Shown piece after piece: positions 8,241 through 49,514 of a DNA stretch of 64,000 bases (position 1 is the stretch's first letter; each line of letters starts with the position of its first letter). The stretch comes from Mustelus asterias. Lineage: Eukaryota. The notes below the pieces were generated by a model. It saw only the letters and a program-made list of their open reading frames with translations. It made no database searches and was not told where the DNA came from. Location of the stretch: the NCBI RefSeq assembly GCF_964213995.1, contig NC_135804.1, positions 69,502,001 through 69,566,000 of the forward strand, given 5' to 3'. A program made the translations under genes and the position numbers.

Positions 8241-8242
8241 TA

Positions 8243-13848: not shown

Positions 13849-14503
13849 CGGCTTGTGTCTGTGGGTTTCATTCTCCCCCCCAAAAAATTATTTCCATCTC
13901 CTGCAAAATTGTCACACCAGAGTGGTGGGGCTGGGTACTCTGTGTTCGTGAGTTTTTTTGGCAGACAGGAGCGTGTTGATGACTCTAAGCACCATTATGA
14001 TGATGCCACGGTGAAAATTAGTCTGACTCCTCTCTGAGCTTTGCATTCACGCTGGCATCTGGGCTCATGTCTGTGTACTGGGTAAGGGATCTGAAATCCC
14101 CATACAAGGCCCTGGGCGGGGTGGGGGGGGTGGGGGGGGGGGTGGGGGGGGGGGGGGGCGACGGGAGGGAATCACTCATGGGGCCAGCTTTCTTTTCTCA
14201 GTGACACAGCATTGAGGGGCTTCCCCAAGTAACATCAACGTGAAGCATTCCTCCAGTGATCATCAATGGAAGAGGAATTCCACTGGGGAATTAAGGGTTA
14301 TCATGAACGTTTGGGTAAGTGGAATTCAGTCCACGAAAAGATCAGCCATGATCTTATTGAATGGTGGAGCAGGCTCGAGGGGCCAGATGGCCTACTCCTG
14401 CTCCTAGTTCTTATGTTCTTATGCACTTATGTAACTACAACTTCCTAACCTTACATGGCCTATCACTACTCAGTGACTCCCAAGACTGTACATCAGAGGT
14501 GGA

Positions 14504-16140: not shown

Positions 16141-19100
16141 TGTCCTGTACTGTCTGCCTGTCCATTCTTGAGTTTTTAATGGATCTGCCCCTCGTTAGAG
16201 CAGATCAGCTGCAGGCAATTCGGCGGCGCATTCCAGCAAGTTACATGCAGTTTGTTTGTTAGTATTGAGTGGAAGACAAGTGAACACTTGCAGATGTGCT
16301 GATTGAGTGGGGGTTGGGGGGGGGGGGAGAGTGGTACTGTATCAGTGCCTCAATGAATGGTGACAGGGGAGAGATAGGAAGGTGTCACATAGCCATCGGA
16401 GTCCGGAGGAGATACGGGCATTGTGCGGTTAGGTCCGGGGTGGGGGTGAGGGGGATTATTCTGCCTAACATCTGTCTGATGGAGATGGGAGGGTGAATCT
16501 CTCTGCCTGAGTTCAGTGGGAGGAAGGGGGGTCAGCTGCCACTCTGAGATCAGTAGGGGCAAGTGGGATTCGCTGCCATGCTGCCCTAGATCGGTGGGGG
16601 TGAAGGGGGGCCCACTGCCACTCTGCCTGAGATCATTGGGGGGGGGGGAGGGCAATCCTCTGCCACTCTGCCTGAAATCAGTGGGGGAGCGGGTGGATGG
16701 GAGTTCGTTGCCACTCTGCCTGAGATCAATGAGGGAGAATGGGGGTCTGCTGCCACTCTGCCTGAGATCTGTGGAGGAAGGGGAAGGGCCTGCGATTGGT
16801 CAGTGTGGCGTGGGTGTGGGGGGATAAGAGGGTCAGTAATGTTGTGAGGGTGGGGCAATGTCCGGGGAGGCATTCGCCGGCCCGGGAGTGATGTGGTCGG
16901 GGAGCATTATTCTATCATTTGTTTCTGCGCATGCGTGGCTCGAGGCACCAGTTGGAGCTCCAGGATTTTGGGCGGGTTACGTCCTGCCCACAGGCCTGTG
17001 CAATTCGGAATTGCTGATATTTTTGCAGGCAGAGTGCGTACAGAGGCGCCTGAGAGCAGGTCTAAAAGTCGGATCTGAAACACTCCAATTTCAACTCTGC
17101 CCAGCACTTAAAATCAAAATGGCAAAATAGGGTTCTCAGAGAGCAGATTGGAAGAGCCAGAGCGCCACCCTGTGCTTTCGTGTGGTAAAACACGCTGCTC
17201 AACGGTGACATGCAATTCTGATTTACAATGGGGGGGGCATGGGATAGGTTAATTCAGGTCGTGGCAACAGACCACGGGAAATTAATAAAGAAAATGATGG
17301 AGAATGGGTATGAGCCGCGCACATCGACGTGGAAGAAAAGGGATGGCGGACAAGTGGCAGATGGACTTCAAACCAGATAAATGCGTCGTGGTCCATTTTG
17401 GTAGGTCAAATGGGATGAAGAAGTACAATATTAAGGGAAAGACGCTTAGTACTGCAGAGGATCAGAAGGACCTTGGGGTCCGGGTCTATATGACTCTAAA
17501 ATCGGCCTCGCAAGTGGAGGAGGTGGTTAAGAAGGCGTATGGTGTGCTGGCCTTTATCAATCGAGGGATTGAGTTTAGGAGTCTGGGGATAATGATGCAG
17601 CTATATAAGACCCTCGTCAGACCCCACCTGGAGTACTGTGCTCAGTTCTGGTCGCCTCATTACAGGAAGGATGTGGAAAAGATTGAAAGGGTGCAGAGGA
17701 GATTGACAAGGATGTTGCCTGGATTGAGTGGCATGCCTTATGAGGATAGGCTGAGGGAGCTCGGTCTTTTCTCCTTAGAGAGACGTAGGATGAGAGGAGA
17801 CCTAATAGAGGTATATAAGACGTTGAGAGGCATAGATCGGGTGGACTCTCAGAGGCTTTTTCCCAGGGTGGAAATGGCTGCTCCGAGAGGACACAGGTTT
17901 AACGTGCTGGGGGGTAGATACAGGTTCGGTGGAAGTTTTTCACTCAGAACGTTGTGGGCGAGTGGAATCGGCTGCCGTCAGTGGTGGTGGAGGCAAACTC
18001 AATAGGGTCTTTTAAGAGACTCCTGGATGAGTACATGGGACTTAATAGGATGGAGGGTTATAGGTAGGCCTAAAAGGTAGGGATATGTTCGGCACAACTT
18101 GTGGGGCCGAAGGGCCTGTTTTGTGCTGTAGTTTTCTATGTTTCTATGTTTCTATACAGTGAAAATTATTGTTTCTTGCACGCTATACAGACAAAGCATA
18201 CCGTTCATAGAGAAGGAAACGATAAAGTGCAGAATATAGTGTTACAGTCACAGCTAGGGTGCGGAGAAAGATCAACTCAATGCAGGGTAAGTCCATTCAA
18301 AAGTTTGACAGCAGCAGAGAAGAAACTCTTCTTGAGTCGGTTGGTTCGTGACCTCAGACTTTTGTATGTTTTTCCCGAAGGAAGAAGGTGGAAGATAGAA
18401 TGTCCAGGGTGCCTGGTGTCCTTAATTATGCTGGCTGCTTTGCCGAGGCAGTGGGAAGTGTAGACAGAGTCAATGGATGGGATGCTGGTTTGCGTGATGG
18501 ATTGGGCTGCATTCACGACCTTTTGTAGTTCCATGCTGTCTTAGGCAGAGCAGCAGCCATACTAAGCTGTGATACAGCCAGAAAGAATGCTTTCCATGGT
18601 GCATCTCTAAAAGCTGGTGAGAGTTGTAGCTAACATGCCAAATTTCCTGGTCTACTGAGAAAGTAGAGGCGTTGGTGGGCTTTCTTAACTATAGTGTCGG
18701 CATGGGGGCACCAGGACATGTTGTTGGTGATCTGACACCGAAACACTTGAAGCTTTCGACCCTTTCTACTTCGTCTCCGTTGATGGACATGGGGCATGTT
18801 CTCCTTTACACTTTCTGAAGTCGATGACAATCTCCTTTTTGTTGTCGTTTTGTTTTGTTTAGTTACATATCGCACAATGTTCCAGAACAACAAAGAATTT
18901 AAAACATGCCGATCTCATCATTGCACCTTGTGCTATTCTGCACTCTACTTTTGTAATATCTAGCTTATATTAATAATGGCACAATTTCCACTCTTTTCCC
19001 ACTGGACATTAAAGCCACCCATTGCTCAACGCCGTTCAATATTCGGAGGCACTTTCCAAATGACCAATCCTCACCTTTTCGTAACATTTGCAATTAAACT

Positions 19101-19779
19101 GACAAACCCTTGGGGGGGAGGGGGGCGGGGGGGGGGCGGAGGGGGGTTTCACAGTGACTTCATTGCAGTATTTATGTAAGCCTACTTGTCACACTAATAA
19201 ATAAACTTTAAAACTTTAAAAACATTTCAAGCTGCAATTGAAAAAGTGCGGGAAAGTCTCGTAAATATGCAACGAATTATTAGGCGAGTGGAGGGGGAAA
19301 CTGTGAAAGTATTTCAGCTTAATTGCCTGCAAAACTGAAATAAATTATGAATATAATAGTCTTGCATTACAACATGCAAGATAAGTAAAATCAGGGGCAT
19401 ATGTAGGAGGGAGGGAATGAATGAAAGCAAAAAATGATTGGTTCTGCGATAAAGTGAACGGAAGAATGATTAAGTGACAAAAGGGATAATAATGCATGGA
19501 ATAATATGGGCGGTAATTGGACTAGAAAAGCAAGAAAATTATATCTGGATTAATTTTGCATTTTGATTATTGTTTTAACTGTTTTGCTTTGAACATTGCC
19601 TAATTGCACTTATGGCTTTTCAAATTAATTCTGTGCCCTAAGTTTCTCAAATAATGCACTGCAGGAGGAAAACGACGGAGAGGAAATATAAGTCAAATGG
19701 CACCACATATTTCTTCAGATGACGTGGCTATAGCGCACCCAAAGAGAACTTTCATACCAACTGGCATATACGAACCAGT

Positions 19780-26084: not shown

Positions 26085-26214
26085 TGTTTCCAGGTTAGTT
26101 GTTTATTCCCTCGGTCGCAAGGCAGATGTTTTAGTCTTGACATTTGCTCCTGAGGACGAAATTGTGCCTCCAGCGTCACAAGCCAATGAAAGACTCACAC
26201 AATCTCATCAGTAT
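26085..26214 (-). other. Probable terminal exon (3' UTR; encodes DTDEIV* if entered in phase 1)
   Basis: Strong acceptor gtttttttctcttttcgttgatttag ending at 26215; AATAAA on the minus strand at 26107-26102 (another near 25200). 3' end uncertain. Confidence 0.5.
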
Positions 26215-27244
26215 CTAAATCAACGAAAAGAGAAAAAAACAGCCTTGGATATGTTAAATTGTTTGAATAAGTTGTTTCATTTTAACCACTGCTACATCCG
26301 TTGTCTTGTTTTGTAACCAACAGCATTCCCGTGAATAACTGTCACATTACCAGTCACGAAATTGTCACCTTTACATCAGCATATGACATCACAATCTAGT
26401 TTTTAATTATTAAGGCATGTTTCTGCAGTAGATGTTCTAATTTTTAATGTGCACAATATTAGTCTTTGTAATAAAAAACGATTACGTCCGAGTAATAAAA
26501 TTAAATTAATATTTGTAGGTTTTGCAGCTTATACGAAATGAATAAACGTTAAATAATTGTAGGCCATATCTATAAATGAACACGATATGGTGATGAATTT
26601 AAATTGTTTTACGAGAAGCTGTAGCGGATAAGTAAATTGTATTCTCAGCTTTTTACTTTAATTGGTTAAAACAGCACCTTTACGATGCTTTTCCTTTTTA
26701 GGAAGCTATGAAATTGATTAAATTATGAGTAAAGTGGACGATTCCACTAAAAGTGTTTTCCTAAATAGTGCAGCAATTTTCACTGGTCCTCATATATTTC
26801 GACATTCTTCCTCACAACTACTTATTTATATAAGTACCTTGCTGTCACGCTATGAGGGATACTTCACAATTAATATGAATTTCTCCTCTAAGATAACATG
26901 ACAATCTTTGATAGCGCAGGCAAATTTAGACTTGAAGCTTCCGCTTTAATGACGAGCAATAAACAATGCACGAGGATTTTCGTATGCAATAATTCTTTAA
27001 GAACGCATCTGTTTCATAACATTGTACAAAACTTTGGCAAAAATAAGTTTTTCATTGTTAAACAGTATGCATATGACATGGCGAGGGTGCCTCAAAATAA
27101 ATGGCGCTGCGCTCAACGAAGGAAACATCACTCAGGATTTACGTCAATGAAAACGTTCAATATGGAACGCGTTCAGATTCACTAAAGTTCAACTTTATTC
27201 CTAGCTTTGCGAATAATTTTCGGCATTTACCGTTAGCGCTTCAC

Positions 27245-27890
27245 CTAATTAGCACTGCTGCCACGCAGTGCCATGGACCTGGGTTCAGTTCCGGCATCGG
27301 GTCACTATCATTGTGGAGTATGCACATTCTGCGCCTATCTGCATGGGGTTTCCTCCAGGTGGCCCAGTTATCTCTCACTGTTCAAAGATGTGGGTGCTCG
27401 GTTGATTAGCCAATGCTAAATTGCCCGTTATGTTAAAGGGGATCAACAGGGTAAATACATGGATTTAATGGGATAGGGGCTGGCTGGAATTGTTGTCAGT
27501 GCAGGCTCAATAGGCCGAATGGTCCCCTTCTGCACTGTCGGCACCCTATGATTATTTGCGGTGTGCAAGCTGTTGTACAGTGAGCTTTTTAGTTTAGTTT
27601 ATTGATTTGTGTCAAGTAGGGTTACATTAACCCTGCAATGAAGTTACTGTGAAAATACCCGAGTCGCCACACCCCGGCGCCTGTTTGGGCACACAGAAGG
27701 AGAATTTAGCAGGGCTAATGCACCTAACCAGCACGACTTTCAGACTGCGGGAGGAAACCAGAGGACCCGAAGGAATCCCACGCAGACACGAGGAGAATGT
27801 GCAGACTCCAAACAGACAGTGACCCAAGCCGGGAATCGAACCCGGGGTCCCAGGCACTGTAAGGAAGCCGTGCTCACCATTGTAGCACCA
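27245..27890. mobile_element. Two V-SINEs tail-to-tail (~27245-27555 +, ~27590-27890 -) in the last intron
   Basis: HE1-like head and core on opposite strands. Confidence 0.75.
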
Positions 27891-27944
27891 TGGGTAAAAC
27901 GCGCAAATGTTTTACCCCATGCTCTGTGGTAATATTTTTCTTAC

Positions 27945-28046
27945 CTTTAAAATGGGCGCCTTTTGAAATGGTCCACAATGATAATTGTCAGAATGAGAAT
28001 CACGAGGAATCCTAATACAAAACGAGGAATCAGAGCAACGTGGAGC
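27945..28046 (-). CDS. IgSF V-C1 receptor, exon 5: transmembrane with Arg plus short tail (LHVALIPRFVLGFLVILILTIIIVDHFKRRPF*)
   Basis: Acceptor ttagttcacag, hydrophobic stretch followed by the basic stop-transfer KRR, TAA at 27949-27947, donor AG|gtaaga. Confidence 0.8.
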
Positions 28047-28635
28047 CTGTGAACTAACATACAGTAATTACAGGAATCATCAGTTCATTCATTATACGTG
28101 GCATGTTTCGGCAAGAATAAAATGAGACAGACAAATTCAGAATTTAAGAACGGGAATGAAATAAGTTGACCCATAATTTCAGTGTCTCTAATTACAATAG
28201 GATCGGCATCCTGTATGTGAATTTTGAATCAAGAAGTGAAGAAAATATTTATGTTCCGCCATACGTTCCCATTGTATTAAAAGCGGGAGAGTTGAGTTAA
28301 CACAGGTAAGTCGAAGCATGAAGAAATCAGTCCGCATAAAATCACCTATGCTCCGCGATTTGCCAAGTTCAGCTAATTCTAGCAAAATGCAATTATGCCT
28401 CAAAGGGATATCTTATTTATATCCAACAGAGTAATCATTTGCTAGTTACCTAATTACAAGATCACTTTTTTGAACGTGAAATGTTCGCTTGACCCCCGCA
28501 CTGCACCGCAAAACCCCATGTAATATTCCTCACTTTACTTTGAAAAATACAGCTGCAGAATACTTTATTTTTGGCGAGTAACGTTAATATTCGTGGAATT
28601 AAGGTCTCAGTAGACTTGGTGGAATTAGTGAACAT

Positions 28636-29170
28636 TTGGAATATTGTGTGCAGTTCTGGTCACCTCACTATAAGAAGGATGTGGAAGCGCTGGAAAGAGT
28701 GCAGAGGAGATTTACCAGGATGCTGCCTGGTTTGGAGGGTAGGTCTTATGAGGAAAGGTTGAGGATGCTAGGGCTGTTCTCTCTGGAGCGGAGGAGGCTG
28801 AGGGGAGACTTAATAGAGGTTTATAAAATGATGAAGGGGATAGATAGAGTGAACGTTCAAAGACTATTTCCTCGGGTGGATGGAGCTATTACAAGGGGGC
28901 ATAACTATAGGGTTCGTGGTGGGAGATACAGGAAGGATATCAGAGGTAAGTTATTTACGCAGAGAGTGGTTGGGGTGTGGAATGGACTGCCTGCACTGAT
29001 AGTGGAGTCAGACACTTTAGGAACATTTAAGCGGTTATTGGATAGGCACATGGAGCACACCAGGATGATAGAGAGTGGGATAGCTTGATCTTGGTTTCAG
29101 ATGAAGCTCGGCACAACATCGTGTGCCGAAGGGCCTGTTCTGTGCTGTACTGTTCTCTGTTCTCTGTTCT
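28636..29170 (+). mobile_element. Young CR1 3' fragment, same subfamily as 21456-22243
   Basis: Near-identical ORF end (…LLDRHMEHTR..SGIA*) and tail. Confidence 0.92.
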
Positions 29171-29286
29171 AGTTGTTTTTCCTTTCTATGCGCAATTTAT
29201 GCGCATATTAGAAAATATAATGCTTTTAGTTGTTATATGTTTTACTTTCAGCATGTGGATCAAATTATAGGCTTCCACAACTTTAC

Positions 29287-29305
29287 TCGGAATGGTAAAT
29301 TGTGT
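29287..29305 (-). CDS. IgSF V-C1 receptor, exon 4: 19-nt connecting-peptide microexon (D-TIYHS-E)
   Basis: tactaac...ctcattttgcag|ACACAATTTACCATTCCGA|gtaaag. Its phase 1->2 is exactly what is needed to join the C1 exon to the TM exon in frame. Confidence 0.6.
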
Positions 29306-29318
29306 CTGCAAAATGAGA

Positions 29319-31065
29319 CATGGTTAGTACGTTTGCAGATGACACCAAGATTGGTGGCATAGTGGACAGTGATCGCAAACCGGCCTCCCATCCCTTGACT
29401 CTGTCGACACTTCTCGCTGCCTCGGCAAAGCAGCCAGCATAATTAAGGACCCCACGCATCCCGGACATTTTCTTTTCCACCTTCTTCCATTGGGAAAAAG
29501 ATACATAGGTCTCAGGTCACGTACCAACCGGCTCAAAAACAGCTTCTTCCCTGCTGCTGTCAGACTTTTGAATGGACTTACCTTGCATTAAGTTGATCTT
29601 TCTCTACACCCTAGTTATCACTGTAACACTGCATTCTGCACTCTCTCTTTTCCTTCTATATGAACGGTATGCTTTGTCTGTATAGGGCGCAAGAAAGAAT
29701 TGTCACATGTTAATACATGGGACAATAATAAATCAAATCAGATCAAATCAAAAAAGTTATCTAGGTTTGCAACAGAATCTTGATCAATTGGGCCAATCGG
29801 CTGATGAATGGTAGATGGAGTTTAATTTAAATAAATGCGAGGTGATACATTTTGGTAGATCAGCTGAGGGCAGGACCTACTGAGTTAATAGTAGGGCGTT
29901 GGGGAGAGTTATAGAACAAAGAGATCTAGGGTACAGGTTCATAGCTCCTTCAAAGTGGAGTCACAGGTGGACAGAGTGGTGAAGAAGACATTCGGCATGT
30001 TTGATTTCATTGGTCAGCACATTGAATACAAGAGTTGGGATATCTTGTTGAAGTTGTACACGACATTAGTAAGACCACACTTGGGATACTGTGTACAGTT
30101 CTGGGCATACCATCATAGAAAGAATATTAATAAACTAGAAAGAGTACATCAAAGATTTACGAGGATGCTACCGGGACATGATGGATTTAGTTATACGGAG
30201 AGGCTTGATAGACTAGGATTTTTTTCCTGGAGGAAGGAGGCTTCGGGGTGATATTACAGAGGTCCATAAGATGATGAGCGGCATAGATCAGCTGGATAGT
30301 CAACATATTTTCCCAAAAACAGTGGAGCCTAAAACTAGAGGGCATAAGTTAAAGGTGAGAGCGGAGAGATACAAAAGTGCCCAGAGGGTGGTGAGTGTCT
30401 GAAACAAGCTGCCAGAGGTAGTAGTAGAGGCAGGTACAATTTTGTCTTTTGAAAAGCATTTAGAAAGTTACATCAGTAAGATGTGTATCGATGGATATGG
30501 GCCAAATGCGGGCAATTGGGACTAGCTTAGTGGTTAAGAAAGAGCGACATGGAGAAGCTGGGCCGAAGGGCCTGTTTTCATGCTGTAATCCTCTATTACT
30601 CTATGACTCTATTGGGACTTGATGGTTTGAGTGATAAGGAGAGGTTAGATGGATTGGGACTCTTTTCCCTTGAGCACCTGAGGCTTAGGGGTGATCTTAT
30701 AGAGGTCTATAAAATATTGAGGGGAATAGATAAGGCAGATAACCGACATCATTCCCCAAGGTAGGGGAGTCTAAAACAGGAGGTCATGAGTTTAAGATGA
30801 GAGCGGAGAGATACAAAGGGGTTTACAGGGGCATTTCTTTCACTCAGATGGTGGTGCATGTCTGGAACGACCTGTCAGATGCAGTAGTCGTGGTGGTACA
30901 CATCTGTCTTTAAAGGCGCAGTTAGACAGTTCGGCAGCTACATGTGTAAGATGGGTATAGAGGGATATCGGGCAATCATGGGAACTTGGGACTAGTTTAG
31001 GTGTGAAAGGCAAGGGCGGCATGGACAACTGGGGCTGAAGGGCCCGTTTACATACTGTAAACCTC
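29319..31065 (+). mobile_element. Nested cluster: CR1 (~29319-30610) split by a Rex1/Babar 3' end (~29375-29750), then a second CR1 tail (~30610-31065)
   Basis: FADDTKIGGIVDS interrupted by IIKDPTHPGH..LLPLGKRY; RPHLGYCVQFW downstream. Confidence 0.8.
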
Positions 31066-31796
31066 AAAATGAAATTCCAAAATAATTTCCAGGTGAAGAT
31101 CCTTGCGTTAACTATTCACCTAACCTTCATGAAGTGCAAGATATTTGTACGACATAGCTGATTACAGAAATGTGAATTGAGGCTTTAACTGAATTTACCT
31201 AACGTCCTGAATAGCGGTATGCTGGCGATTTTGGAACATCAGGGCACAATAACAAACGTCCTGCTTTATTCGATGAACAGACTTATCAAGTTTTATAAAT
31301 TAGCTTTGATACGTCGTAACAGAAAAACATGACTTGCATTCTAGTTTTTGAGCATTATGAATGCGATAGGCAAGATTATCTTACATAAACATAGGCGTAG
31401 ATAACAGGAATAGGAGTAGGCCATTCGGCACTTCAAGCCTCTATCTCCATTCATTCTGAGCATGGCAGATCATCCAAGTCAGTAACCTGATCCGGCCTTC
31501 TCCCATCGCCTTTGATCTCATTCGCCCCAAGATCCATATATATAACTCCTTCCTCAAATCGTGCAATATTTTTGGCTTCAACTGCTTTCTCTGGTAGCGA
31601 GTTGCAGAGGCTTACCGCTCTCGAGGTGAAGAAACATCTCCTCATCTCAGTGTTAAAAGGTTTACCCCGTATCTTTAGACTACGTCCCATGGTGATGGGC
31701 TCCCCAACATTACACCACACTTCATTTACCATATTGTCTAGTCCTTTTAGAATTTTCAATGTTTCTATGAGATTCCTCCTGCTCATTATTTTGAAC

Positions 31797-32579
31797 CTCA
31801 AAACTAGAAAGAGTGCATAAAATATTTATGAGGATGCTACCGGGACATGATGGATTTAGTTATAAGGAGAGGCTTGATAGACTAGGATTTTTTTCCTGGA
31901 GGAAGGAGGCTTCGGGGTGATCTTACAGAGGTCCATAAGATGATGAGGGGCATAGATCAGCTGGATAGTCAACATATTTCCCCAAAAACAGTGGAGCCTA
32001 AAACTAGAGGGCATAAGTTAAAGGTGAGAGCGGAGAGATACAAAAGTGCCCAGAGGGTGGTTTCAATCACCAGGCAAGACTGTTCTCTTCCTGTTGGGGA
32101 GCACTTCAGCGGCCATGGGCATTCAGCCTCTGATATTCGGGTAAGCGTTCTCCAAGGCGGCCTTCGCGACACACGACAGCGCAGAGTCGCTGAGCAGAAA
32201 CTGATAGCCAAGTTCCGCACACACGAGGACGGCCTCAACTGGGATATTGGGTTCATGTCACACTATTTGTAACCCCCATAGTTGCCTAGACCTGCAGAGT
32301 TTCACTGGCTGTCTTGTCTGGAGACAATACACATCTTTTTAGCCTGTCTTGATGCTCTCTCCACTCACATTGTTTTGTTTCTTAAAGACTTGATTAGTTG
32401 TAAGTATTCGCATTCCAACCATTATTCATGTAAATTGAGTTTGTGTCTTTATATGCTCTGTTTGTGAACAGAATTCCCACTCACCTGAAGAAGGGGCTTA
32501 GAGCTCCGAAAGCTTGTGTGGCTTTTGCTACCAAATAAACCTGTTGGACTTTAACCTGGTGTTGTTAAACTTCTTACTG
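31797..32579 (+). mobile_element. Composite insertion: 260-bp local CR1 copy + Penelope-like GIY-YIG C-terminus + terminal repeat
   Basis: 13-bp TSD cattattttgaac (31784-31796, 32580-32592); PVGEHFSGHGHS..VSVLQGG..RRVAEQKLIAKFRTHEDGLN.D is a Penelope endonuclease C-terminus. Confidence 0.88.
32476..32521 (+). ncRNA. Minimal type I hammerhead ribozyme motif of the Penelope terminal repeat
   Basis: cac-CTGAAGA-a-GGGGC-ttaga-GCTCC-GAAA-gc-TT-gtg: conserved core, stem II and a palindromic AAGCTT in place of helix III. Confidence 0.65.
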
Positions 32580-33459
32580 CATTATTTTGAACACCAGCGA
32601 ATAAATTCTTATCCGAATAAATCTCTCCTCATTAGTGAATCCCTCCATTCCGGCGATAGGTCTGGTAAACATTCGCTGCACTCACTCTGTAGCAAGAACG
32701 TCCTTCCTCAGATAATGAGACAGAAACTGAATACAGTATTCCAGGCGTTGTCTCTCAAAGCCCTGTATATTTACAGCAAAACATGCTTGCTTCTGTGGTC
32801 GCATCCTCTCTCTATGGTGGCCACAATGCAATTTGTCTTATTTATCGCCTGCTGCACATACATGCTTATCTTGAATGACTGATGTACAATTTCAGCCAGA
32901 TTTCGTTGTACATTCCCCTCTCAATCTAAAGCCACTCAGATCATATTTTGCCTTCCAGCTTTTGCTGCCAAAGTGGAGAATGTCACATTTATCCACATCA
33001 TCCTGCACCCCCTATGCATCTGCCCACTCTATCAATTTTTCCAAATCTTTGTATCCCCATCAAAACCCACCCTCCCACCCAGTTTTGTGTCATCTGCAAA
33101 TTTGGAGATATTGCATTTAGTTCCATCATTTAAATCATCCATATATTGTGAACACCTGAATTCCTAGAAGCGATCCCTGCTGTACTCCACCAGTCAATGC
33201 CTGCCTTTCGGAAAAAGACCCAGCTTATTCTAACTCTTTGTTCCCTGTGCGCCAGCCAGTTTTCTATTCATCTCAATATACTGTCCCCAATCCGAAACGC
33301 TTTTATTTTGCACGATGTAATAAGCATAAGACAATAAATGTCAACATTGAATAGCTATGGTCGATCTTTCTTGGACAGAAGAAAAGTCGACTAAGGAATC
33401 ATGAACCATAGAATAGAAAGACATTACAGCTACTGTTCATGGCATTCGAGAATATTTAA

Positions 33460-35360
33460 GAACATAAGAACATAAGAAATAGGAGCAGGAGTAGGCCATC
33501 TAGCCCCTCGAGCCTGCCCCGCCATTCAATAAGATCATGGCTGATCTGACGTGGATCAGTACCACTTACCTGCCTGATCCCCATAACCCTTAATTCCCTT
33601 ACCGATCAGGAATCCATCCATCCGCGCTTTAAACATATTCAGCGAGGTAGCCTCCGCCACCTCAGTGGGCAGAGAATTCCAGAGATTCACCACCCTCTGG
33701 GAGAAGAAGTTCCTCCTCAACTCTGTCTTAAACCGACCCCCCTTTATTTTGAGGCTGTGTCCTCTAGTTTTAACTTCCTTACTAAGTGGAAAGAATCTCT
33801 CCGCCTCCACCATATCCAGCCCCCGCATTATCTTATAAGTCTCCATAAGATCCCCCCTCATCCTTCTAAACTCCAACGAGTACAAACCCAATCTCCTCAG
33901 CCTCTCCTCATAATCCAAACCCCTCATCTCCGGTATCAACCTGGTGAACCTTCTCTGCACTCCCTCCAATGCCAATATATCCTTCCTCATATAAGGGGAC
34001 CAATACTGCACACAGTATTCCAGCTGCGGCCTCACCAATGCCCTGTACAGGTGCATCAAGACATCCCTGCTTTTATATTCTATGCCCGTCGCAATATAGG
34101 CCAACATCCCATTTGCCTTCTTGATCACCTGTTGTACCTGCAGACTGGGCTTTTGCGTCTCATGCACAAGGACCCCCAGGTCCCTTTGCACGGTAGCATG
34201 TTTTAATTTGTTTCCACTGAGATAGTAATCCCATTTGTTATTATTTCCTCCAAAGTGTATAACCTCGCATTTCTCAACGTTATACTCCATTTGCCATATC
34301 CTCGCCCACTCACTCAGCCTGTCCAAATCTCTCTGCAGATCTTCTCCGCCCTCCACACGATTCACTTTTCCACTTATCTTTGTGTCGTCTGCAAACTTCG
34401 TTACCCTACACTCCGTCCCCTCCTCCAGATCATCTATATAAATGGTAAACAGTTGCGGCCCGAGTACCGATCCCTGCGGCACGCCACTAGTTGCCTTCCT
34501 CCAACTGGAAAAACACCCATTTATTCCGACTCTTTGCTTCCTGTCGGATAGCCAGTCCCCAATCCACTTTAACACACTACCCCCAACTCCGTGTGCCCTA
34601 ATCTTCTTCAGCAGCCTTTTATGGGGCACCTTATCAAACGCCTTTTGGAAATCCAAAAACACCGCATCCACCGGTTCCCCTCCATCAACCGCCCTAGTCA
34701 CATCTTCATAAAAATCCAACATGTTCGTCAAGCACGACTTTCCCCTCATGAATCCATGCTGCGTCTGATTGATCGAACCATTTCTATCCAGATGCCCTGC
34801 TATCTCCTCTTTAATAATGGATTCCAGCATTTTCCCTACTACAGACGTTAAGCTGACCGGCCTATAGTTACCCGCCTTTTGTCTCCTTCCTTTTTTAAAT
34901 AGCGGCGTAACATTAGCCGTTTTCCAATCAACCGGCACTACCCCAGAATGCAACGAGTTTTGATAAATAATCACTAACGCATCCACTATTACCTCTGACA
35001 TTTCTTTCAATACCCTGGGATGCATTCCATCCGGACCCGGGGACTTGTCCACCTTCAGTCCCATTAGTCTACCCAGCACTGCCTCTCTGGTAACATTAAT
35101 TGTATTAAGTATTTCTCCTGCTGCCAACCCTCTATCGTTAATATTTAGCAAACTATTTGTGTCCTCCACCGTGAAGACCGACACAAAAATCTTATTTAAA
35201 GACTCAGCCATATCCTCATTTCCCACTATTAACTCCCCCCTCTCGTCCTCCAAGGGTCCAACATTCACTCTAGCCACTCTATTCCTTTTTATATATTTAT
35301 AAAAACTTTTACTATCATTTTTTATATTAATTGCTAGCCTAGCTTCATAGTCTATCCTTA
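33460..35360 (-). mobile_element. Young CR1 LINE, 5'-truncated, with uninterrupted RT ORF (~600 codons), in the C1-CP intron
   Basis: KSPGPDG, NYRPVSLTS, DFQKAFDKVPH, GVPQGSVLGP, FADDTK; (ttcttatg)n tail. Confidence 0.96.
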
Positions 35361-35663
35361 TTAAAGATATTAAAGAGGAAGTATTGATTGAGGACTGCAG
35401 CTGTGGAGCAAACATGCAATTTCTACATTTGGGCATGAAGGACCAGTGTTTTCGAAAGTTATTCCGGGAAATGGAACGACAGAACTGGAAACAGAAAATT
35501 CCGCGATCTTGGTCTAGATGGGCTTCTACCATTTAGCAATGACTTTACTGCATACTCCAACCACAACGTCCTTTTGCAGAGTTGAAATGTGTCAGTGTGA
35601 GGAGAATGACAGTTGATTTTAAGAAAGTGGACGATACCCATGAGACGCCATATAAGGACATTA

Positions 35664-35995
35664 CGGCACGGTAGCACAGTGGTTAGCACTGCTGCTTCAC
35701 AGCGCCAGGGTCCTGGGTTCGATTCCCGGCTCGGGTCACTGTCTGTGTGGAGTTTGCACATTCTCCTCGTGTCTGCGTGGGTTTCCTCCGGGTGCTCCGG
35801 TTTCCTCCCACAGTCCAAAGATGTGCGGGTTAGGTTGATTGGCCAGGTTAAAAATTGTCCCTTAGAGTCCTGGGATGCGTAGGTTAGCGGGATTAGCGGG
35901 TAAAATATGTGGGGGGTAGGGCCTGGGTGGGATTGTAGTCGGTGTAGACTCGATGGGCCGAATGGCCTCCTTCTGCACTGTAGGGTTTCTATGAT
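35664..35995 (+). mobile_element. Full-length HE1-like V-SINE
   Basis: tRNA-like A/B boxes (gtggttagcac / gggttcgattccc), V-domain gtttcctcccacagtccaaag, CR1-derived tail. Confidence 0.9.
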
Positions 35996-36091
35996 TACTT
36001 TCAGTATCGGTGAATCGTGGTCTCTAGTCTCGTTAATAATCTGTAAATAAATAATCTTAATAAAACTTGTTTGCTCCACTATTTGGCTCAC

Positions 36092-36391
36092 CTTTCCAAT
36101 TTAGAACATAGAAGCTGGCATTAACCGGAATAATAAGCGTGCGATGAGTTACTTGGCACGTTACGTAACGGTCAGTTCTTGTGACAACCAAAGAGCTGAA
36201 AAGTTCATAAAGTCCTTCGGAATTTAGATATTTAAATGTATTTATCCCAGCTGCAACACGAAAGCCATCCTTGTACCAAGTTACATTGATACCATCCGGG
36301 TAAAAAGCCGCCGTTTTACACGAAATAATTAGAGACTCGGGTGTCTTATTTGCAAGTAACTCGGACTTGATGCTCAACGGAATTGGAGGAA
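36092..36391 (-). CDS. IgSF V-C1 receptor, exon 3: C1-set Ig domain
   Basis: Acceptor ctttattttgcag, donor G|gtgagc, 300 nt, phase 1-1. C1 signatures ISCKTAAFYPDGINVTWYKDG, GLYELFSSL, VTCQVTH. Confidence 0.95.
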
Positions 36392-37918
36392 CTGCAAAAT
36401 AAAGCAGAAACAGACTATGTTCATCTCTGCTTTGTAACCAACATTTCGTCCAGTCATTAGATTTGCACTGTTTTTAAATTTCCTGTGATAATTTACACTG
36501 ACGTTCACGACGATTAGAGAGCAATTTTCTATTGCACCCTTTGAAGGGTATGGAGGAACAGTGTGAGGAGTGCAAACAGCTGGGTATCTCTTTTATGCAT
36601 TAAGTTCAATACAAAGAAAACGTGTAATGTATTTCTAAACCATGGAATATTCGCTCGCATATCCAATTCAATGGAAACAGACAAAGTCAAATTGCGAACA
36701 AATAAATGTATTATTAAGGAAAAGTGATGAATGAGGCAGAAAAAAATCAAACATTTGCATTGCACTAATATCTTCCTAAATTGCCAACCATAATTAAAAT
36801 CTGAACAAATGCGACGATCGTAATATTAATCGTTGCAAGAGAGACTGCAGATTAAAAACATTCTTTGCTTGAGTTCTGAATTGTTTGGACGAATTTAGTA
36901 GTTACGATTTAATTAAGTATAATACACTAACGCATTTCCAATGCTGTCTATCTCGGAGAGCTACAGTTTCACAGAAACTGCGAGAGAAACCGCACTCTGC
37001 GAGAAAAAAAATCCCGATATCCTTGTTTGACTGTTCATTGCTGGTGAATCAAATTTGCTCCACCATTAACAAAGGGAAGTCCTATTATGCACCGCCGTCA
37101 AGTGTAAAACGAAGTCGACTCTTAAGTGATGAAGTTTCACAAGGGGCTAATCGATAGAAAAGGGGACAACAATTAATATTTTAATCCAGGGCACGGAAAA
37201 TACAATTAGAACTAATTCTCGAAATTAATGTTTGATATAATCCTATATAAAATATGTCGCAGTTGTCTGATTTTCGATACACTGTTGGATTTTATTTTTC
37301 AGTACTGAAAGCCCGGTGTGCAATTCAGTCTATAAAGAATCGAGAGGATAGTTTCAAGAACAATAGTTTTCCTTCCGAACGGCTAGATTTTCATGTTGGC
37401 CGATGCAGTGATGGAAGCCAATTGGTAGTTCCATTACACAACACTTCCCAATGCATTTTATTAACTTCAATTGAAATATAAATCACACGAGCGTAAAACG
37501 TGCAACCAATTCGTTACATTCCGCTTTGGCGGAAAGTCAGGATCTACAGAAACTCCTTCATCAATCGAATAGCAATGGTGTTGAATTTCAGTTCTCACAC
37601 ACAACCCTGGATTAATTGAATTGTTATCACAGTGGAAATCGCTTTATATCGGCTGAATATTTTCTTGTGTCTACCACCTCCCCACCACCAACCCTCCCCC
37701 CCCCCCTCCCCGCCCTTGACTTTTTATGTTATTTTGCATCAGCGCATTAGGACTTCGAGTATAATTTTCAGTTATAACGCAAAGAATGGATCGATTGCAA
37801 ATGTTTCTCATCAGAGCTATTGGAAAACGATAATCAATGAACATATCAATTTCATACATATTCGATTTCACCTGTTATGAATTATAAAATGAATGATGTG
37901 TGGGCGATTTTCGCTTAC

Positions 37919-38239
37919 CGTAGATAACAAGCTTTGACCCAGTTCCATTTGCAACGAGGCGATCCAGATGTTTTACTCCGCAATAATAGACCCCTGAGTC
38001 CGCGGCGTGGACCTTCAGGAGCTGAAGAGTGGCTTCACCTTTCTTCAAAAGACGAATTACTTTTCTGCTGTCCGATCGTGACTGCAGAAAGTCAGTATCG
38101 CCCAGTTTCCACCAATATATATTCACATTCGAAATATCATTAAAAAGAGGAAACGCGCAATAAAAGGTGACGTTTTCACCTGCCAGCCGGTGAGCACTTT
38201 CGGGGGCTTGGGACACTTTTATCTGACCATCAGCAACAT
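37919..38239 (-). CDS. IgSF V-C1 receptor, exon 2: V-type Ig domain with germline-joined J-like G strand
   Basis: Acceptor tttcttcctcacag, donor G|gtaagc, 321 nt, phase 1-1. Motifs VTFYC, IYWWK, ATLQL, DSGVYYC and J-like ANGTGSKLVI (GxG motif) in one exon. Confidence 0.95.
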
Positions 38240-38422
38240 CTGTGAGGAAGAAATGCAAACAATAAGATCATCTATGGCAACAAAAAGGAGAAAAAAGGAA
38301 AGATTTTGAGCCGATCGGAGAGATGAGGCTTGGCTGAGGGGGGTGGTGGGGGGCGGGTGGTTCGGGTGGAAGGGAGGATGTGTTCGGAGGGGGAGTGCAG
38401 TGGTAAGGCGTCAAATACATAC

Positions 38423-38480
38423 CTGCGTGAATAATGACGAGAACATTTACACATAGATGCAAAACAGCGTCCAGAAGCAT
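38423..38480 (-). CDS. IgSF V-C1 receptor, exon 1 (signal peptide MLLDAVLHLCVNVLVIIHA)
   Basis: ATG at 38480, 19 mostly hydrophobic codons plus 1 nt, then donor G|gtatgt (phase 1); in frame with the V exon across a 183-nt intron. Confidence 0.85.
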
Positions 38481-46680: not shown

Positions 46681-49514
46681 GCTTGGACCCAATCATTCAA
46701 TACCTCCCAGATGTTTTACTTTCTTCAAAACAGTTAAAAAGATACTTCCGGTTTTTAACGTTCTTGCAGTCAGATACTTTAACAAAGTCATTGACCTACT
46801 TTTGATATTTTTACGATTTGCAGAAAGGGCAGCGACGGAGTTGACAGCTAGAATGGTAATATGAATGTCTGCAAAGATTAATACATAGCAAGATTTACTG
46901 CCTAAAGCTGAAGTGCAAATTGACAAAATTATGATATTATGGAGAGTCAGAATATAGAAATAATCGTTATGTTCGTCGAAGTAGTTAGATCAGAATTTTA
47001 TGCACCTTTATTACAAACTATTTCACATGGTGAATTATGTAGACGTTTCTAAGTTTCGACATTGTTGCTGTTAGCTGCCTAATATCTGTGCCTCATTTGT
47101 TCTTAACTTGCTCTACTTTTTGACACAGAGTGAAACAAGACTCTTCATTATTATGTAATATTATTTCGATAAATCTTTAAGATTTCACAATTTATAAATA
47201 TAGTGATACCTTCATCACCTGGAGTGTAAATTTGCGATTGTCTATTCATGACCTTACTGCTGTCGCGTAGCTTCATTCAATGTAGTTTTTTTTTGTAAAT
47301 GGGTTACAAGAAGTGAATAAGCTCACACGAGCTTATAGTGATCCATGGATTGCAAAGGCCACGTATCATTTCCCAAACACCGGCACGCTATCGTTCTTGA
47401 AATGCTATTCAGCAGTTGCCTTATTTTGCAATTCGTTACAGTGACATCTCCGTATTGATTATAACTTGTTTATTTTTTGATCTAAGTTCAGTTCTCAACT
47501 TGTTCCTGTCAATTAAAATCTAGTCGTCGCAAATATAGCGGACACGTCCATTTATCAATAATTTACATTTTTCCTCGTAATTCTGCTTTGCACTTTTCCA
47601 GTACGATCACCTGCTGTTTGTAATGGGCTGACGAATAAGATACCCAGAATTCTAAATTTGGAATACCCAGTGTTTGATCAATTCTACAATAACTTCCAGT
47701 CTTTTCAGTACTAAACACAATTATTCCCGATGTCTCCTGAACTATTTGCTCCGTTCCTTTAAGAGGTTGTTGATATGCACTCCAAGACCCAAATATCCCT
47801 CCACACCTGTTGGTGGTGGAGACAATGCGTGTCCCAACGCCTTGTTTGTCCTCGCAATTCTCCGTTTGATTTACAGAGCAGAATTTTACATGTTCCCGAC
47901 CAGGGTGCTAGGGGAGGGGGAAGCAAAATGGCATGGATGTCCATCTAAGTACCTACCCATCCATCCCAAACTGACCCTCTAATTCTGTGGGTGGGCGGAC
48001 ACCAAAATCGCCATGTACAAATGACAATTTTAAATCAATAACACGTCTTATGAAGCCGACCAAACCTAATAATATAATGACCACACCGTAAACCGTTAAC
48101 CTCAATGAATAAAGGGCGGGAAGAAAGGGGTTGCCACACTTCGGTGGCCGGCTTTTGCCTACAGCGGGTCGGCGCCTTCAGATTGATCACCAACTTCCTT
48201 CGTACCGCTCCTTTTCTTAGCCCCTTCCGCCCACCTCTAATCCCATGCCACCAACCCAAACCCATCCAATCCCCCCTCCACCCCCCCCCAACCCCCACTC
48301 CACCCCCGCACGCCATGCACTGCCCTTAACCTGAAGACTTACCTGAAAAGGGGAGTCCTCGGCTTCGGGCTCTTCTTCTCAGTTACAGTGGCGGCAGCTG
48401 CCATTACCCCATTACCAGCGCTGCCAGGGCTGGTAGAACTGCCGGTCCATTGGATTAGTAGGTAGCTCCAGAGGACGGACGCAAAGATGCATTTGGTCTT
48501 CGTTAATGAACCTTCTAGTGCTTTAATGCTGAGGGACTTTTCGGCGTGTTCTCACTCCGCTTCACGCCGACAAGGTTTGAGGGAGGCGCGAGGAATGGCC
48601 ACGTGCCTTCTGCCCACATAGCAATCGGGCACCGTTTGGAATTGTTCTCTCTCTATCCATTGCACAGGCGTGTTGGCATCACGTGCAACATTCATATATA
48701 TTTCCGCTATTTTCAAGTGCAAATAATTGCTGCATAAGTCGATAAGGAAACGATCTCGTAGGAGTTCTGTGGAACCCCTATCGAAAGAACAATCCAGTCA
48801 AAATAAAATATCTTGCCAACGTTTGCTTATTTTCAGTGAGGGAATAGTGCATCCCATTCCCCTGGGAATCAATGGTCTTTTACTTGTTTTGCCGGTCAAA
48901 TATTTCTTGAAATTAGGACGACTATATCAAACTCACCAATCTCTTCGACGTGTTGTTTTATTTCCTCGAAAAATTCAATCAATGTCGACAAACGCACATT
49001 TGTCTCAACCACCCCTCTGGGTACCCTTAATTAATCCGTGTCATTCGAAAACACAATGAGTAACGCGCCACAAAATGACTAATTTATTTGCCAGATACCT
49101 GGATGACACTGACGGGTCTGTCATTGCTGCCGCGAATGTTTTGTTTTAACAATGCTACTATGATAGAGGTACCATATTCCTTCTGAAAGACGCCTAAGGC
49201 GATAGAGAATTGGAAAATGATGTGCGGATCATTTGCTCTCTTCTCCATTGTTTCTGTTTGTAACCTTATAAATTTCATCCGCAGCATCACACCACGGTTA
49301 TCTGCACAGCAAAAATGACATTTCATGCATTTCCATATCTCGTACTTCATCTGGGAAATTACACTACAGTCATCATGATGGCAGTGTGTCTGGATTTTAC
49401 ATTCCTTGCACGATTTGAAATGTTTTTCCCAACGCAGGGCATGGCAAATGTAACATTAAAAGCAGCCGTCCTAAACGGGTCGTTGAGGGTCATTATTTTA
49501 GATATTCCTTTCGC

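What the first reader, a model, noticed from the sequence alone, without database searches (positions are those of the whole stretch)
26085..38480. Intact non-rearranging VJ-C1 receptor with TCR-like exon plan and an activating (Arg) transmembrane segment
Seen in sequence: five phase-compatible GT-AG exons give a 265-aa type I protein with leader, V domain already containing a J-like strand (YYCGVKHLDRLVANGTGSKLVI), C1 domain (FYPDGINVTW, CQVTH), 19-nt connecting exon, and TM ALIPRFVLGFLVILILTIII with tail DHFKRRPF*. The stop lies 2 nt before the last donor, so a separate untranslated exon follows. There is no RSS at the V/J junction, no tyrosine motif in the tail and no hinge Cys. Established: C / connecting peptide / TM+stop / untranslated exon is the TCR alpha/delta constant-gene layout. 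An N-proximal TM Arg with a short tail is how NKp30 and NKp46 pair with FcR-gamma or CD3-zeta. Germline VJ+C1 genes (PRARP/VJC1-type, shark UrIg) are discussed as relatives of the pre-RAG antigen-receptor ancestor. Inference: this is an activating innate receptor of a poorly described cartilaginous-fish VJ-C1 family, which pipelines would probably label SIRP-like or NCR3LG1-like.
Basis: partly seen in the sequence, partly recalled or inferred. Interest (0 to 1): 0.9.

Follow-up and report, generated by a model that had tools for sequence, protein, structure and literature searches.

The report
Shark activating VJ-C1 immune receptor
This is an intact shark gene for a cell-surface immune receptor built like one antibody or T-cell-receptor chain but fixed in the germline; it is the probable 'switch-on' member of a large, auto-annotated but apparently unstudied shark family of switch-on and switch-off receptors.

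Summary
The gene is real, on the minus strand. Leader (38480-38423), VJ-type V exon (38239-37919), C1-set exon (36391-36092) and an Arg-bearing TM exon with a Tyr-free 8-residue tail are all intact and in phase.

The 19-nt "connecting exon", and so the TCR alpha/delta exon plan, is not supported. That gives 4 coding exons and 261 aa, not 265. The untranslated last exon stays unverified: only DNA runs were found.

The window matches XP_078068149.1 ("NCR3LG1-like", Mustelus asterias) at 104/106 (V), 96/99 (C1) and 33/34 (TM) residues. It belongs to a strongly supported one-to-one orthogroup in six galeomorph sharks.

That orthogroup sits in a multigene VJ-C1 family; every named member was a cartilaginous fish. 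Many members carry ITIM tails and others have a basic-TM short tail, sometimes on closely related ectodomains. This is a paired-receptor family.

A family profile matches SIRP-alpha D1-D2 (69.6 bits) about as well as an antibody V-C chain (72.6 bits).

My reading is an activating receptor that signals through an unidentified ITAM adaptor; this is inferred, not shown.

First readers of this scan noted similar genes elsewhere in this genome (unchecked).

The parts
38423..38480 (-). Exon 1: start codon and signal-peptide (split leader) exon, 58 nt, ends in phase 1
   Evidence: Searches show the ATG at 38480 and a GT donor after 38423. The N-termini of 3 of 6 orthologue models (P0160 10/19, P0159 9/19, P0001 8/19 identical) start and join the V exon the same way. 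The other 3 models, including the near-identical P0158, use other upstream exons.
37919..38239 (-). Exon 2: VJ-type variable domain, 321 nt, phase 1 to 1, with the G-x-G J-like strand inside the same exon
   Evidence: Translation is. Pfam V-set scores E 1.2e-7. The exon is 104/106 identical to P0158 and 74-80/106 to the other five orthologues. The two Gly of the J motif are at least 90% conserved in 53 family members. No RSS motif was found.
36092..36391 (-). Exon 3: C1-set constant domain, 300 nt, phase 1 to 1
   Evidence: Translation is. Pfam C1-set scores E 3.1e-11. PDB hits are antibody constant domains and UrIg2. The exon is 96/99 identical to P0158. tblastn found no second V or C1 exon in the window; the next best E-values were 0.023 and 0.19.
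27945..28053 (-). Exon 4 (corrected start): short stalk, TM segment with Arg (codon 28024-28022), 8-residue tail, stop TAA 27949-27947, then a GT donor
   Evidence: The acceptor AG is at 28055-28054. The exon is 33/34 identical to the C-terminus of P0158, whose model joins it directly to C1. Only 16 hydrophobic residues lie between Arg and Asp, so the Arg must sit inside the bilayer (sequence reasoning).
29287..29305 (-).
   Evidence: It is one of 23 open AG-N19-GT candidates in the intron. Its peptide is absent from 194 relatives. The 6 of 6 orthologue models need no such exon. The finding gave no coordinates for it, so this identification is my guess from its splice context.
26085..26214 (-). 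Proposed untranslated last exon with AATAAA at 26107-26102: unverified
   Evidence: A pyrimidine tract precedes an AG at 26216-26215, and the poly(A) signal follows. The two lamniform orthologues (P0001, P0157) continue after the homologous donor, P0001 by 10 and P0157 by 6 more residues, so a downstream exon exists there. There is no RNA evidence here.
33556..35532 (-). LINE-type reverse-transcriptase ORF inside intron 3 (not part of the gene product)
   Evidence: ORF list. Pfam RVT_1 scores E 2.5e-33.
49174..49305 (-). Upstream exon used by the NCBI model of the near-identical gene in place of the leader (with further pieces at about 49401-49517 and 52855-52962)
   Evidence: tblastn of P0158 gives 93% identity over 44 residues. 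The exon has an AG acceptor and a phase-1 G|GT donor. Whether it is a real alternative 5' end or a modelling artefact is open.

Best explanation
This is an intact, expressed-type gene for a type I membrane receptor of 261 aa. It has four coding exons: split leader, germline-joined VJ variable domain, one C1-set domain, and a stalk/TM/8-residue tail.

It is the Mustelus copy of a gene kept one-to-one in galeomorph sharks. It is the 'activating-type' member of a large VJ-C1 receptor family whose named members are all cartilaginous fish. Other members of that family carry ITIM-bearing tails.

Proposed mechanism:
- The VJ domain binds a still unknown, probably conserved ligand.
- The receptor has no signalling motif of its own.
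- The Arg buried in the outer half of its TM helix pairs with an acidic TM residue of an ITAM-bearing adaptor (CD3-zeta-, FcR-gamma- or DAP12-like), which carries the activating signal.

Shown here: the gene structure, domain types, orthology, the family context with ITIM relatives, and the conservation of Arg. Inferred: adaptor pairing, the activating sign of the signal, and expression.
For: Exons and phases.

Domain types.

Near-identity to XP_078068149.1: V 104/106, C1 96/99, TM exon 33/34.

Second haplotype: DNA contigs of the same individual carry exactly that protein's five V/C1 differences and are also intact.

Orthogroup: 6 rows have SH-aLRT 100, with branching that follows shark orders.

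Conservation: V is kept better than or as well as C1 (74-80/106 against 59-73/99).

TM Arg: present in 5 of 6 orthologue models.

TM cassette: an Arg...Asp/Glu-His cassette occurs in 11 of 194 proteins (7 genes), on ectodomains that are not one clade. The AU test gives p 3e-31, though the group was named after seeing the tree.

Family make-up: of 77 single-V, C1-bearing relatives, 30 have ITIM-like tails.

Pairs: basic-TM short-tail forms pair with ITIM forms on closely related ectodomains, e.g. P0028/P0029, P0022/P0171 and P0186/P0090.
Against: - There is no transcript evidence.
- The adaptor is unidentified. A 2014 survey found no FcR-gamma homologue in shark data (PMC4016189).
- The Chiloscyllium plagiosum orthologue has Gln in place of Arg (P0159).
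- The Arg lies only 4-5 residues into the helix and could partly snorkel.
- The NCBI model of the near-identical gene lacks the leader and uses upstream exons, so the 5' end in Mustelus is not settled.
- The TM exon found nothing among solved structures (0 hits at E up to 10).
Confidence: 0.6

Rival explanations
1. It is simply the shark SIRP-beta: a true member of the SIRP family, orthologous to tetrapod SIRPs and reduced to one C1 domain.
For: - The family profile aligns colinearly with SIRP-alpha D1-D2 (2wng_A residues 3-205, 69.6 bits). D3 scores 51.5 bits and SIRP-gamma has E 2.3e-29.
- Paralogue tails carry LTYAAL/TEYAEI-type motifs.
- One ray member has V + 2 C1 and a 153-residue tail (P0029).
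- Many NCBI names are SIRP-alpha/beta/gamma-like.
- The best Atlas structural match by query coverage is a 'SIRBL' cluster, TM 0.67.
Against: - An antibody V-C chain scores as high (72.6 bits).
- This gene has one C1 and Arg rather than the SIRP-beta Lys (the Lys is recalled).
- 0 bony-vertebrate proteins appeared among the 23 and 20 hits of two family searches, though both were capped at 8000 candidates.
- No tree with SIRP references and no synteny test could be run.
Confidence: 0.2
2. It is a B7-type ligand (B7-H6/NCR3LG1-like), as the NCBI name says: a V-C membrane protein that is recognised rather than one that recognises.
For: - NCBI names P0001 and P0158 'NCR3LG1-like'.
- The V exon hits PD-L1 and CD276 chains at E 1e-4 to 2e-5 over residues 7-89 or 20-89.
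- Pfam CD80-like C2-set_2 scores E 8.9e-4 on the C1 exon.
Against: - The J-like G-x-G strand is conserved, and C1-set beats C2-set_2 by 8 orders of magnitude.
- No B7 chain is among the 60 best profile hits, which include SIRP-alpha, SIRP-gamma and UrIg2.
- A buried TM Arg plus ITIM-tailed sisters is receptor logic.
Confidence: 0.06
3. It is a decaying or non-functional copy, with a tail cut short by the TAA next to the donor and never made as a protein.
For: - The two lamniform orthologues read on after the homologous donor: P0001 by 10 more residues and P0157 by 6.
- No RNA run was found.
- The nearest annotated model lacks a signal peptide.
Against: - All four coding exons are open, with the canonical Cys-Trp-Cys of both domains.
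- Both haplotypes are intact.
- The same stop is in the M. asterias model, and the two Scyliorhinus models stop even earlier.
- A short tail is what an adaptor-dependent receptor needs.
Confidence: 0.07
4. It is one chain of a germline-encoded, TCR-like heterodimer that assembles with a partner VJ-C1 chain and a CD3-like module through its TM Arg.
For: - It has a VJ + C1 + basic-TM architecture.
- The family profile is as close to antibody V-C as to SIRP.
- First-reader notes describe tandem VJ-C1 gene pairs elsewhere in this genome (s1-890389, unchecked).
Against: - There is no membrane-proximal Cys for an interchain bond.
- No partner gene lies in this window.
- The connecting-peptide exon that suggested a TCR layout is not real.
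Confidence: 0.07

Closest known systems
SIRP family (SIRP-alpha/beta/gamma; solved chains 2wng_A, 4i2x_E)
   Same: - It has a J-containing V domain followed by C1-set domain(s).
- It is a paired family with ITIM-tailed and basic-TM short-tailed members.
- The family profile matches V-C1 colinearly at 69.6 bits.
- Paralogues carry similar tail motifs.
   Different: - It has one C1 instead of two.
- It has Arg near the outer end of the TM rather than the SIRP-beta Lys (recalled).
- It is no closer to SIRP than to an antibody V-C chain.
- No bony-vertebrate relatives appeared in the searches.
- A 2022 review says SIRP origins are unknown beyond mammals, birds and lizards (PMC9652883, passage).
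NKp30 / NCR3 (and the shark NCR3 family of Kinlein et al. 2021, which I could not read)
   Same: - The VJ domain does not rearrange.
- It has a TM Arg and a short tail, and signalling is assumed to go through an adaptor. The NKp30 features are recalled and also stated in the finding.
   Different: - NKp30 has no C1 domain.
- Shark NCR3 genes are reported as MHC-linked (recalled from the abstract). Linkage of this gene was not tested.
- Some members of the present family have V-only isoforms, so an overlap with the 'shark NCR3 family' cannot be excluded.
PRARP (Fu et al. 2019, J Immunol; not held, abstract recalled)
   Same: It is a non-rearranging VJ + C1 + TM membrane protein outside the Ig/TCR loci, and it is discussed as a relic of the antigen-receptor precursor (PMC10751288 and PMC11599192 passages).
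   Different: - PRARPs are described from bony fish to birds and carry an ITIM (recalled).
- This gene has a Tyr-free tail and a TM Arg.
- No PRARP sequence was available to compare.
UrIg and UrIg2 (PMC12227049, sections 4 and 7 read; PDB 9dmx)
   Same: - It is an elasmobranch gene with a single-exon VJ and a split leader, followed by C1-type domains.
- UrIg2 C domains match the family profile at 60.3, 31.6 and 39.9 bits.
   Different: - UrIg has three C domains and is secreted. UrIg2 has nine to eleven C domains.
- The front part of the UrIg2 V domain barely matches (1.2 bits); its end aligns within the 60.3-bit stretch.
- Neither is part of a paired ITIM/basic-TM family.
NITR of bony fish
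   Same: It is a clustered multigene family of V(J)-bearing receptors with inhibitory and activating (charged TM) forms (PMC9652883 passage).
   Different: - The second domain of NITRs is not C1-set (recalled).
- NITRs are known only from ray-finned fish.

Membership tests
SIRP family | N-terminal V domain with a J-like strand followed by C1-set domain(s) | tested here: met
   Pfam finds V-set and C1-set. The family profile aligns colinearly with 2wng_A residues 3-205 at 69.6 bits.
SIRP family | Three extracellular Ig domains (V-C1-C1) | tested here: not met
   There is only one C1 exon. tblastn of the C1 exon against the whole window found no second copy; the next best E was 0.19. The orthologue models also have one C1.
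SIRP family | Orthology to tetrapod SIRPs by tree or synteny | not tested
   No SIRP reference sequence could be brought into a tree.
SIRP family | Activating member pairs with DAP12 through a TM Lys (recalled) | tested here: inconclusive
   The basic TM residue is Arg, not Lys. Pairing is not testable here.
NKp30 / NCR3 | A single VJ domain and no constant domain | tested here: not met
   A C1-set exon lies at 36391-36092, in phase with the V exon and present in all 6 orthologue models.
NKp30 / NCR3 | TM Arg with a short tail lacking motifs | tested here: met
   Arg codon 28024-28022 and an 8-residue tail without Tyr.
NKp30 / NCR3 | Linkage to the MHC | not testable with these tools
   The rest of the window is transposon sequence. 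The chromosome identity of the orthologues' records was not available.
PRARP | Non-rearranging VJ + C1 + TM protein | tested here: met
   and no RSS motif.
PRARP | ITIM in the cytoplasmic tail (recalled from the abstract) | tested here: not met
   The tail has no Tyr. Paralogues do have ITIM-like motifs.
PRARP | Sequence orthology to chicken/bony-fish PRARP | not tested
   The paper is not held and no PRARP sequence was available from any tool.
UrIg / UrIg2 | VJ followed by three C1 domains and secreted (UrIg), or nine to eleven C domains plus TM (UrIg2) | tested here: not met
   This gene has one C1 exon and a TM exon. The definitions come from PMC12227049 sections 4 and 7.
TCR alpha/delta constant-gene layout | A separate short connecting-peptide exon between the C and TM exons | tested here: not met
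   All 6 of 6 orthologue models join C1 to the TM exon directly. There are 23 chance candidates for a 19-nt exon. None of the tested candidate peptides occurs in 194 relatives.
TCR alpha/delta constant-gene layout | Stop in the TM exon followed by a wholly untranslated exon | tested here: inconclusive
   The stop lies 2 nt before a strong donor. The candidate exon is at 26214-26085 with AATAAA. No RNA data were found.
Paired activating/inhibitory IgSF receptor families (generic kind) | Closely related ectodomains, some on ITIM tails and some on basic-TM short tails | tested here: met
   30 of 77 relatives have ITIM-like tails. 15 of 71 tree rows were labelled basic-TM/short-tail by eye and are interspersed with ITIM rows (11 changes on the tree). 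Examples are P0028/P0029 and P0022/P0171.
Paired activating/inhibitory IgSF receptor families (generic kind) | Association of the basic-TM form with an ITAM adaptor | not testable with these tools
   This needs co-expression and co-precipitation. FcR-gamma was reported as not found in sharks in 2014 (PMC4016189).

The most novel reading that the evidence does not exclude
This family, seen here only in cartilaginous fish, may be more than a 'shark SIRP'. It could be a surviving non-rearranging sister of the antigen-receptor chains themselves: one VJ, one C1 and a basic TM residue, about as similar to an antibody V-C chain as to SIRP.

On this reading its Arg-TM members signal through a CD3-zeta-type module as TCR chains do. 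It would then show what a pre-RAG antigen-receptor chain and its signalling looked like. The conserved orthogroup found here would be its best-kept, ligand-constrained member. The shared Arg...Asp/Glu-His TM cassette on unrelated ectodomains would record exon exchange that switches a receptor's sign.
Probability: 0.12. Interest if true: 0.85.

Novelty: new variant of a known kind. Interest (0 to 1): 0.5.

Why it matters
If the reading holds, sharks and their relatives keep a large family of germline VJ-C1 receptors with switch-on and switch-off forms. Genome pipelines scatter this family under at least seven unrelated names.

The family bears on two open questions:
- Where SIRP-type paired receptors come from. 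A 2022 review calls their origin unknown.
- What non-rearranging relatives of the antigen-receptor chains looked like and how they signalled.

This particular gene is the most conserved activating-type member seen here. It is one-to-one in six shark species, with a V domain 70-75% identical across orders. That makes it a practical entry point for finding a ligand and an adaptor.

The correction of the exon model also matters. It removes the one feature that pointed specifically to a TCR constant gene.

Tried and rejected
**The 19-nt connecting exon is rejected.** See the observation check.

**A third possible junction has no support.** That join would be in frame (my reading). No orthologue supports it. 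The two Scyliorhinus models that extend C1 by 11 residues still enter the TM exon at the upstream acceptor. The window's read-through meets a stop after 11 codons (and my reading).

**Transcript evidence could not be obtained.** The look-up of sequencing runs gave only 3 holders, none on record as RNA. Read laying therefore showed DNA haplotypes only.

**Fold comparison was not done.** The Atlas search gave only generic V-C1 neighbours: Ig kappa-like, tapasin-related, CD80, SIRP and butyrophilin-like clusters.

**The TM exon against solved structures gave 0 hits**.

**No paralogues lie in the window**. The remaining long ORFs are transposon genes, so no synteny markers were available.

**The literature searches found no description of this family.**
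- They cover only the open library.
- Kinlein 2021, Flajnik 2012, Ohta 2019 and Flajnik 2023 were asked for and are not held. Fu 2019 and Dornburg & Yoder 2022 were never asked for by id and are known only from reference lists and from recall.
- Any of these may describe it.
- Supplements were not opened. Table S1 and fig. S1 of PMC12227049 and supplementary files S1-S3 of PMC10751288 may list such genes.

**Taxon range rests on partial naming.** Names were looked up for 20 of the 150 listed hits, plus the named rows.

**The joined spliced protein of the window was never assembled, printed or searched.** Exons were searched apart. The natural proteins P0001 and P0158 served as full-length proxies.

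Full report
**1. What is in the sequence**

Reading that strand gives three exons:
- a leader exon, 38480-38423 (58 nt, GT donor, phase 1);
- a V exon, 38239-37919 (321 nt, AG/GT, phase 1 to 1);
- a C1 exon, 36391-36092 (300 nt, AG/GT, phase 1 to 1).

Translated apart, the exons match Pfam V-set (E 1.2e-7) and C1-set (E 3.1e-11). The V exon runs without interruption through a G-x-G J-like strand. No RSS heptamer or nonamer lies in 38300-37850.

The TM exon encodes a hydrophobic segment with one Arg (codon 28024-28022). It continues with an 8-residue tail without Tyr and a TAA at 27949-27947, 2 nt before an AG|GTAAGA donor. Only 16 hydrophobic residues separate the Arg from the Asp that ends the segment. 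The helix must therefore begin upstream of the Arg, so the Arg lies in the outer part of the bilayer (sequence reasoning).

There is no Cys between C1 and the membrane. tblastn of the exon peptides found no second V or C1 exon anywhere in the window.

**2. The exon model needs one correction**

The 8-kb intron holds 23 AG-N19-GT stretches that stay open in that frame, so one is expected by chance.

An acceptor AG at 28055-28054 lets C1 join the TM exon directly and in frame, starting at 28053. Relatives found with the V exon alone decide the matter.
- P0158 is XP_078068149.1, 'natural cytotoxicity triggering receptor 3 ligand 1-like', Mustelus asterias. It is identical to the window at 104/106 (V), 96/99 (C1) and 33/34 (TM exon) residues.
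- P0158 reads from the last C1 residues straight into the residues encoded from 28053.
- The white shark, basking shark and bamboo shark models do the same.
- The two Scyliorhinus models lengthen C1 by 11 residues but enter the TM exon at the same point.

That makes 6 of 6 models. None of 194 relatives holds either of the two best-context candidates' peptides.

The CDS is 786 nt, or 261 aa. The joined protein was not assembled or searched. Exons were searched apart, and natural orthologues served as full-length proxies.

**3. The two ends of the gene**

*5' end.* The leader is matched by the N-termini of 3 of 6 orthologue models (P0160, P0159, P0001). The other three, including P0158, begin with unrelated upstream exons and lack a signal peptide. 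Those of P0158 map to 52962-52855, about 49517-49401 and 49305-49174 in the window. The last has a phase-1 donor. I cannot tell a real alternative 5' end from a modelling artefact.

*3' end.* The two lamniform models continue after the homologous donor, P0001 by 10 and P0157 by 6 residues, so a downstream exon exists in that lineage. In the window the stop precedes the donor.

*Transcripts.* No RNA run holds the locus: 3 holders, none on record as RNA.

**4. Haplotypes**

DNA contigs of one individual (X1 and X2, the same sample) carry both the window's C1 allele and a second one. A second V allele is present as well.

The 7 listed exonic differences are 5 amino-acid changes and 2 silent ones. 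The 5 changes are exactly the V and C1 differences between the window and P0158. Both alleles are intact. 24 further variant rows were not shown, so the 5:2 ratio is not a complete count.

**5. Orthologues and family**

The V-exon search of 1.84 billion representatives gave 237 proteins at E up to 1e-3 and 86 at E up to 1e-10.

Names were looked up for 20 of the 150 listed and came.
- Every named protein with V plus C1 is from a cartilaginous fish: 18 species of sharks, rays and one chimaera.
- The four weak, C1-less hits I looked up were reptilian.
- The names vary: SIRP-alpha-like (PTPNS1-like), SIRP-beta-1-like, SIRP-gamma-like, tapasin-related-like, Ig lambda-1-like, NCR3LG1-like, CD276 homologue, PD-L1-like, TCR-beta-like and 'uncharacterized'.

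Of 186 proteins then held, 77 have one V and at least one near-complete C1. Of these, 30 have ITIM-like motifs in long tails, 15 have no TM segment, and the rest have other tails.

By eye I labelled 15 of 71 tree rows as 'basic TM residue, short tail'. Six isoforms or near-copies were dropped first: P0151, P0152, P0153, P0154, P0166 and P0167.

The quick maximum-likelihood tree of V+C1 shows three things:
- P0158 sits in a 6-row clade (SH-aLRT 100) whose branching follows shark orders, which indicates one-to-one orthologues.
- Its nearest neighbours include ITIM-tailed genes.
- Basic-TM forms are scattered among ITIM forms (11 changes for 15 rows), several as close pairs: P0028/P0029, P0022/P0171 and P0186/P0090.

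An Arg...Asp/Glu-His TM cassette like the window's occurs in 11 of 194 proteins, or 7 genes. A tree that holds their ectodomains together is rejected (p-AU 3e-31), with the caveat that the group was named after the tree was seen. The same TM cassette therefore sits on different ectodomain lineages.

Records of equal length suggest that family members share a chromosome within each species. This is an inference.

First-reader notes of this scan describe further VJ-C1 genes in this genome. One lies 1.6 Mb and two lie about 10.5-10.7 Mb before this window, and others are on other pieces. I did not check them.

**6. Relation to known families**

A profile of 53 members was searched against solved structures. 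The matches were:

| Target | Score |
|---|---|
| Antibody V-C chain | 72.6 bits |
| SIRP-alpha D1-D2 (colinear) | 69.6 bits |
| SIRP-alpha D3 | 51.5 bits |
| UrIg2, end of V plus first C domain | 60.3 bits |
| UrIg2, start of V | 1.2 bits |
| SIRP-gamma | whole-chain E 2.3e-29 |

The family is thus antigen-receptor-like and SIRP-like to about the same degree. That explains the unstable names.

- UrIg (VJ + 3 C, secreted) and UrIg2 (VJ + 9-11 C) have different architectures (PMC12227049, sections 4 and 7).
- NKp30 has no C1.
- PRARP is described as VJ-C1 with an ITIM, from bony fish to birds (recalled; cited in passages).
- Two further family searches returned only cartilaginous-fish proteins, 23 of 23 and 20 of 20. 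Both scored only 8000 candidates.
- A 2022 review states that the origins of SIRPs are unknown (PMC9652883, passage).
- Ten searches of the open library found no description of this family.
- Four key papers were asked for and not held, two more are known only from reference lists, and supplements were closed (see Tried and rejected).

**7. Mechanism and verdict**

The best-supported reading is an adaptor-dependent activating receptor. It has a conserved VJ domain for an unknown ligand, no motif of its own, and a buried Arg that recruits an ITAM adaptor. Arg is present in 5 of 6 orthologue models and is Gln in P0159.

Which adaptor is involved is open. A 2014 survey found no FcR-gamma homologue in shark data (PMC4016189, passages).

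The receptor and its family are real and largely unstudied. The TCR-type exon plan is not supported.

Both look-up of encoding contigs and structure prediction were closed, so synteny, orthologue exon structure and fold comparison remain undone.

Noticed in passing
window 1-9311 and 9922-19224 (N run 9312-9511 between them): A 9.3-kb stretch is repeated in tandem at 99.7% identity on either side of an assembly gap. It carries transposon ORFs (DDE_Tnp_4, reverse transcriptase). It could be a recent duplication or an assembly artefact at the gap.
   Followed up: partly
window 52855-52962, about 49401-49517, 49174-49305 (minus strand): Three upstream exons form the N-terminus of the NCBI model XP_078068149.1 in place of the signal-peptide exon. 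They are conserved in the window and the last has a phase-1 donor. This is either an alternative 5' end without a signal peptide or a chimeric gene model.
   Followed up: partly
window 36058-36091 (minus strand, just past the C1 donor): Reading through the C1 donor gives 11 more codons and a stop. These are homologous to the 11-residue insert that the two Scyliorhinus orthologue models include. Donor choice therefore differs between shark genera, and intron retention here would give a soluble V-C1 form.
   Followed up: partly
window 36110, 36193, 36251, 37955, 38221 (and silent 36179, 38013): The sequenced individual is heterozygous. The second haplotype changes five residues in V and C1 and equals the annotated M. 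asterias protein. Replacement changes outnumber silent ones 5 to 2 among the listed rows, with 24 rows not shown.
   Followed up: yes
window 33556-35532 and 56754-59139; 54835-55443; 3238-3882: A LINE reverse-transcriptase ORF lies inside intron 3 on the gene's strand. A LINE endonuclease plus RT pair, an integrase fragment and a Harbinger-type DDE ORF lie elsewhere. Apart from this gene the window is transposon sequence.
   Followed up: yes
relatives P0015, P0032, P0058, P0178, P0182 (other species): One subfamily of the same VJ-C1 family has a Trp-Trp-Ile-Tyr start to its TM segment. Its tail is Cys- and Lys-rich, about 70-85 residues long and without Tyr motifs. It is neither ITIM-type nor basic-TM-type, and its function is unknown.
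   Followed up: no
window 37711-38336: One low-depth contig of run X2 skips 624 bases between two G/C-rich low-complexity stretches in introns 1 and 2, which would remove the V exon. The side is only 21 letters and the depth 7.4, so it is probably an assembly artefact at the repeats.
   Followed up: no
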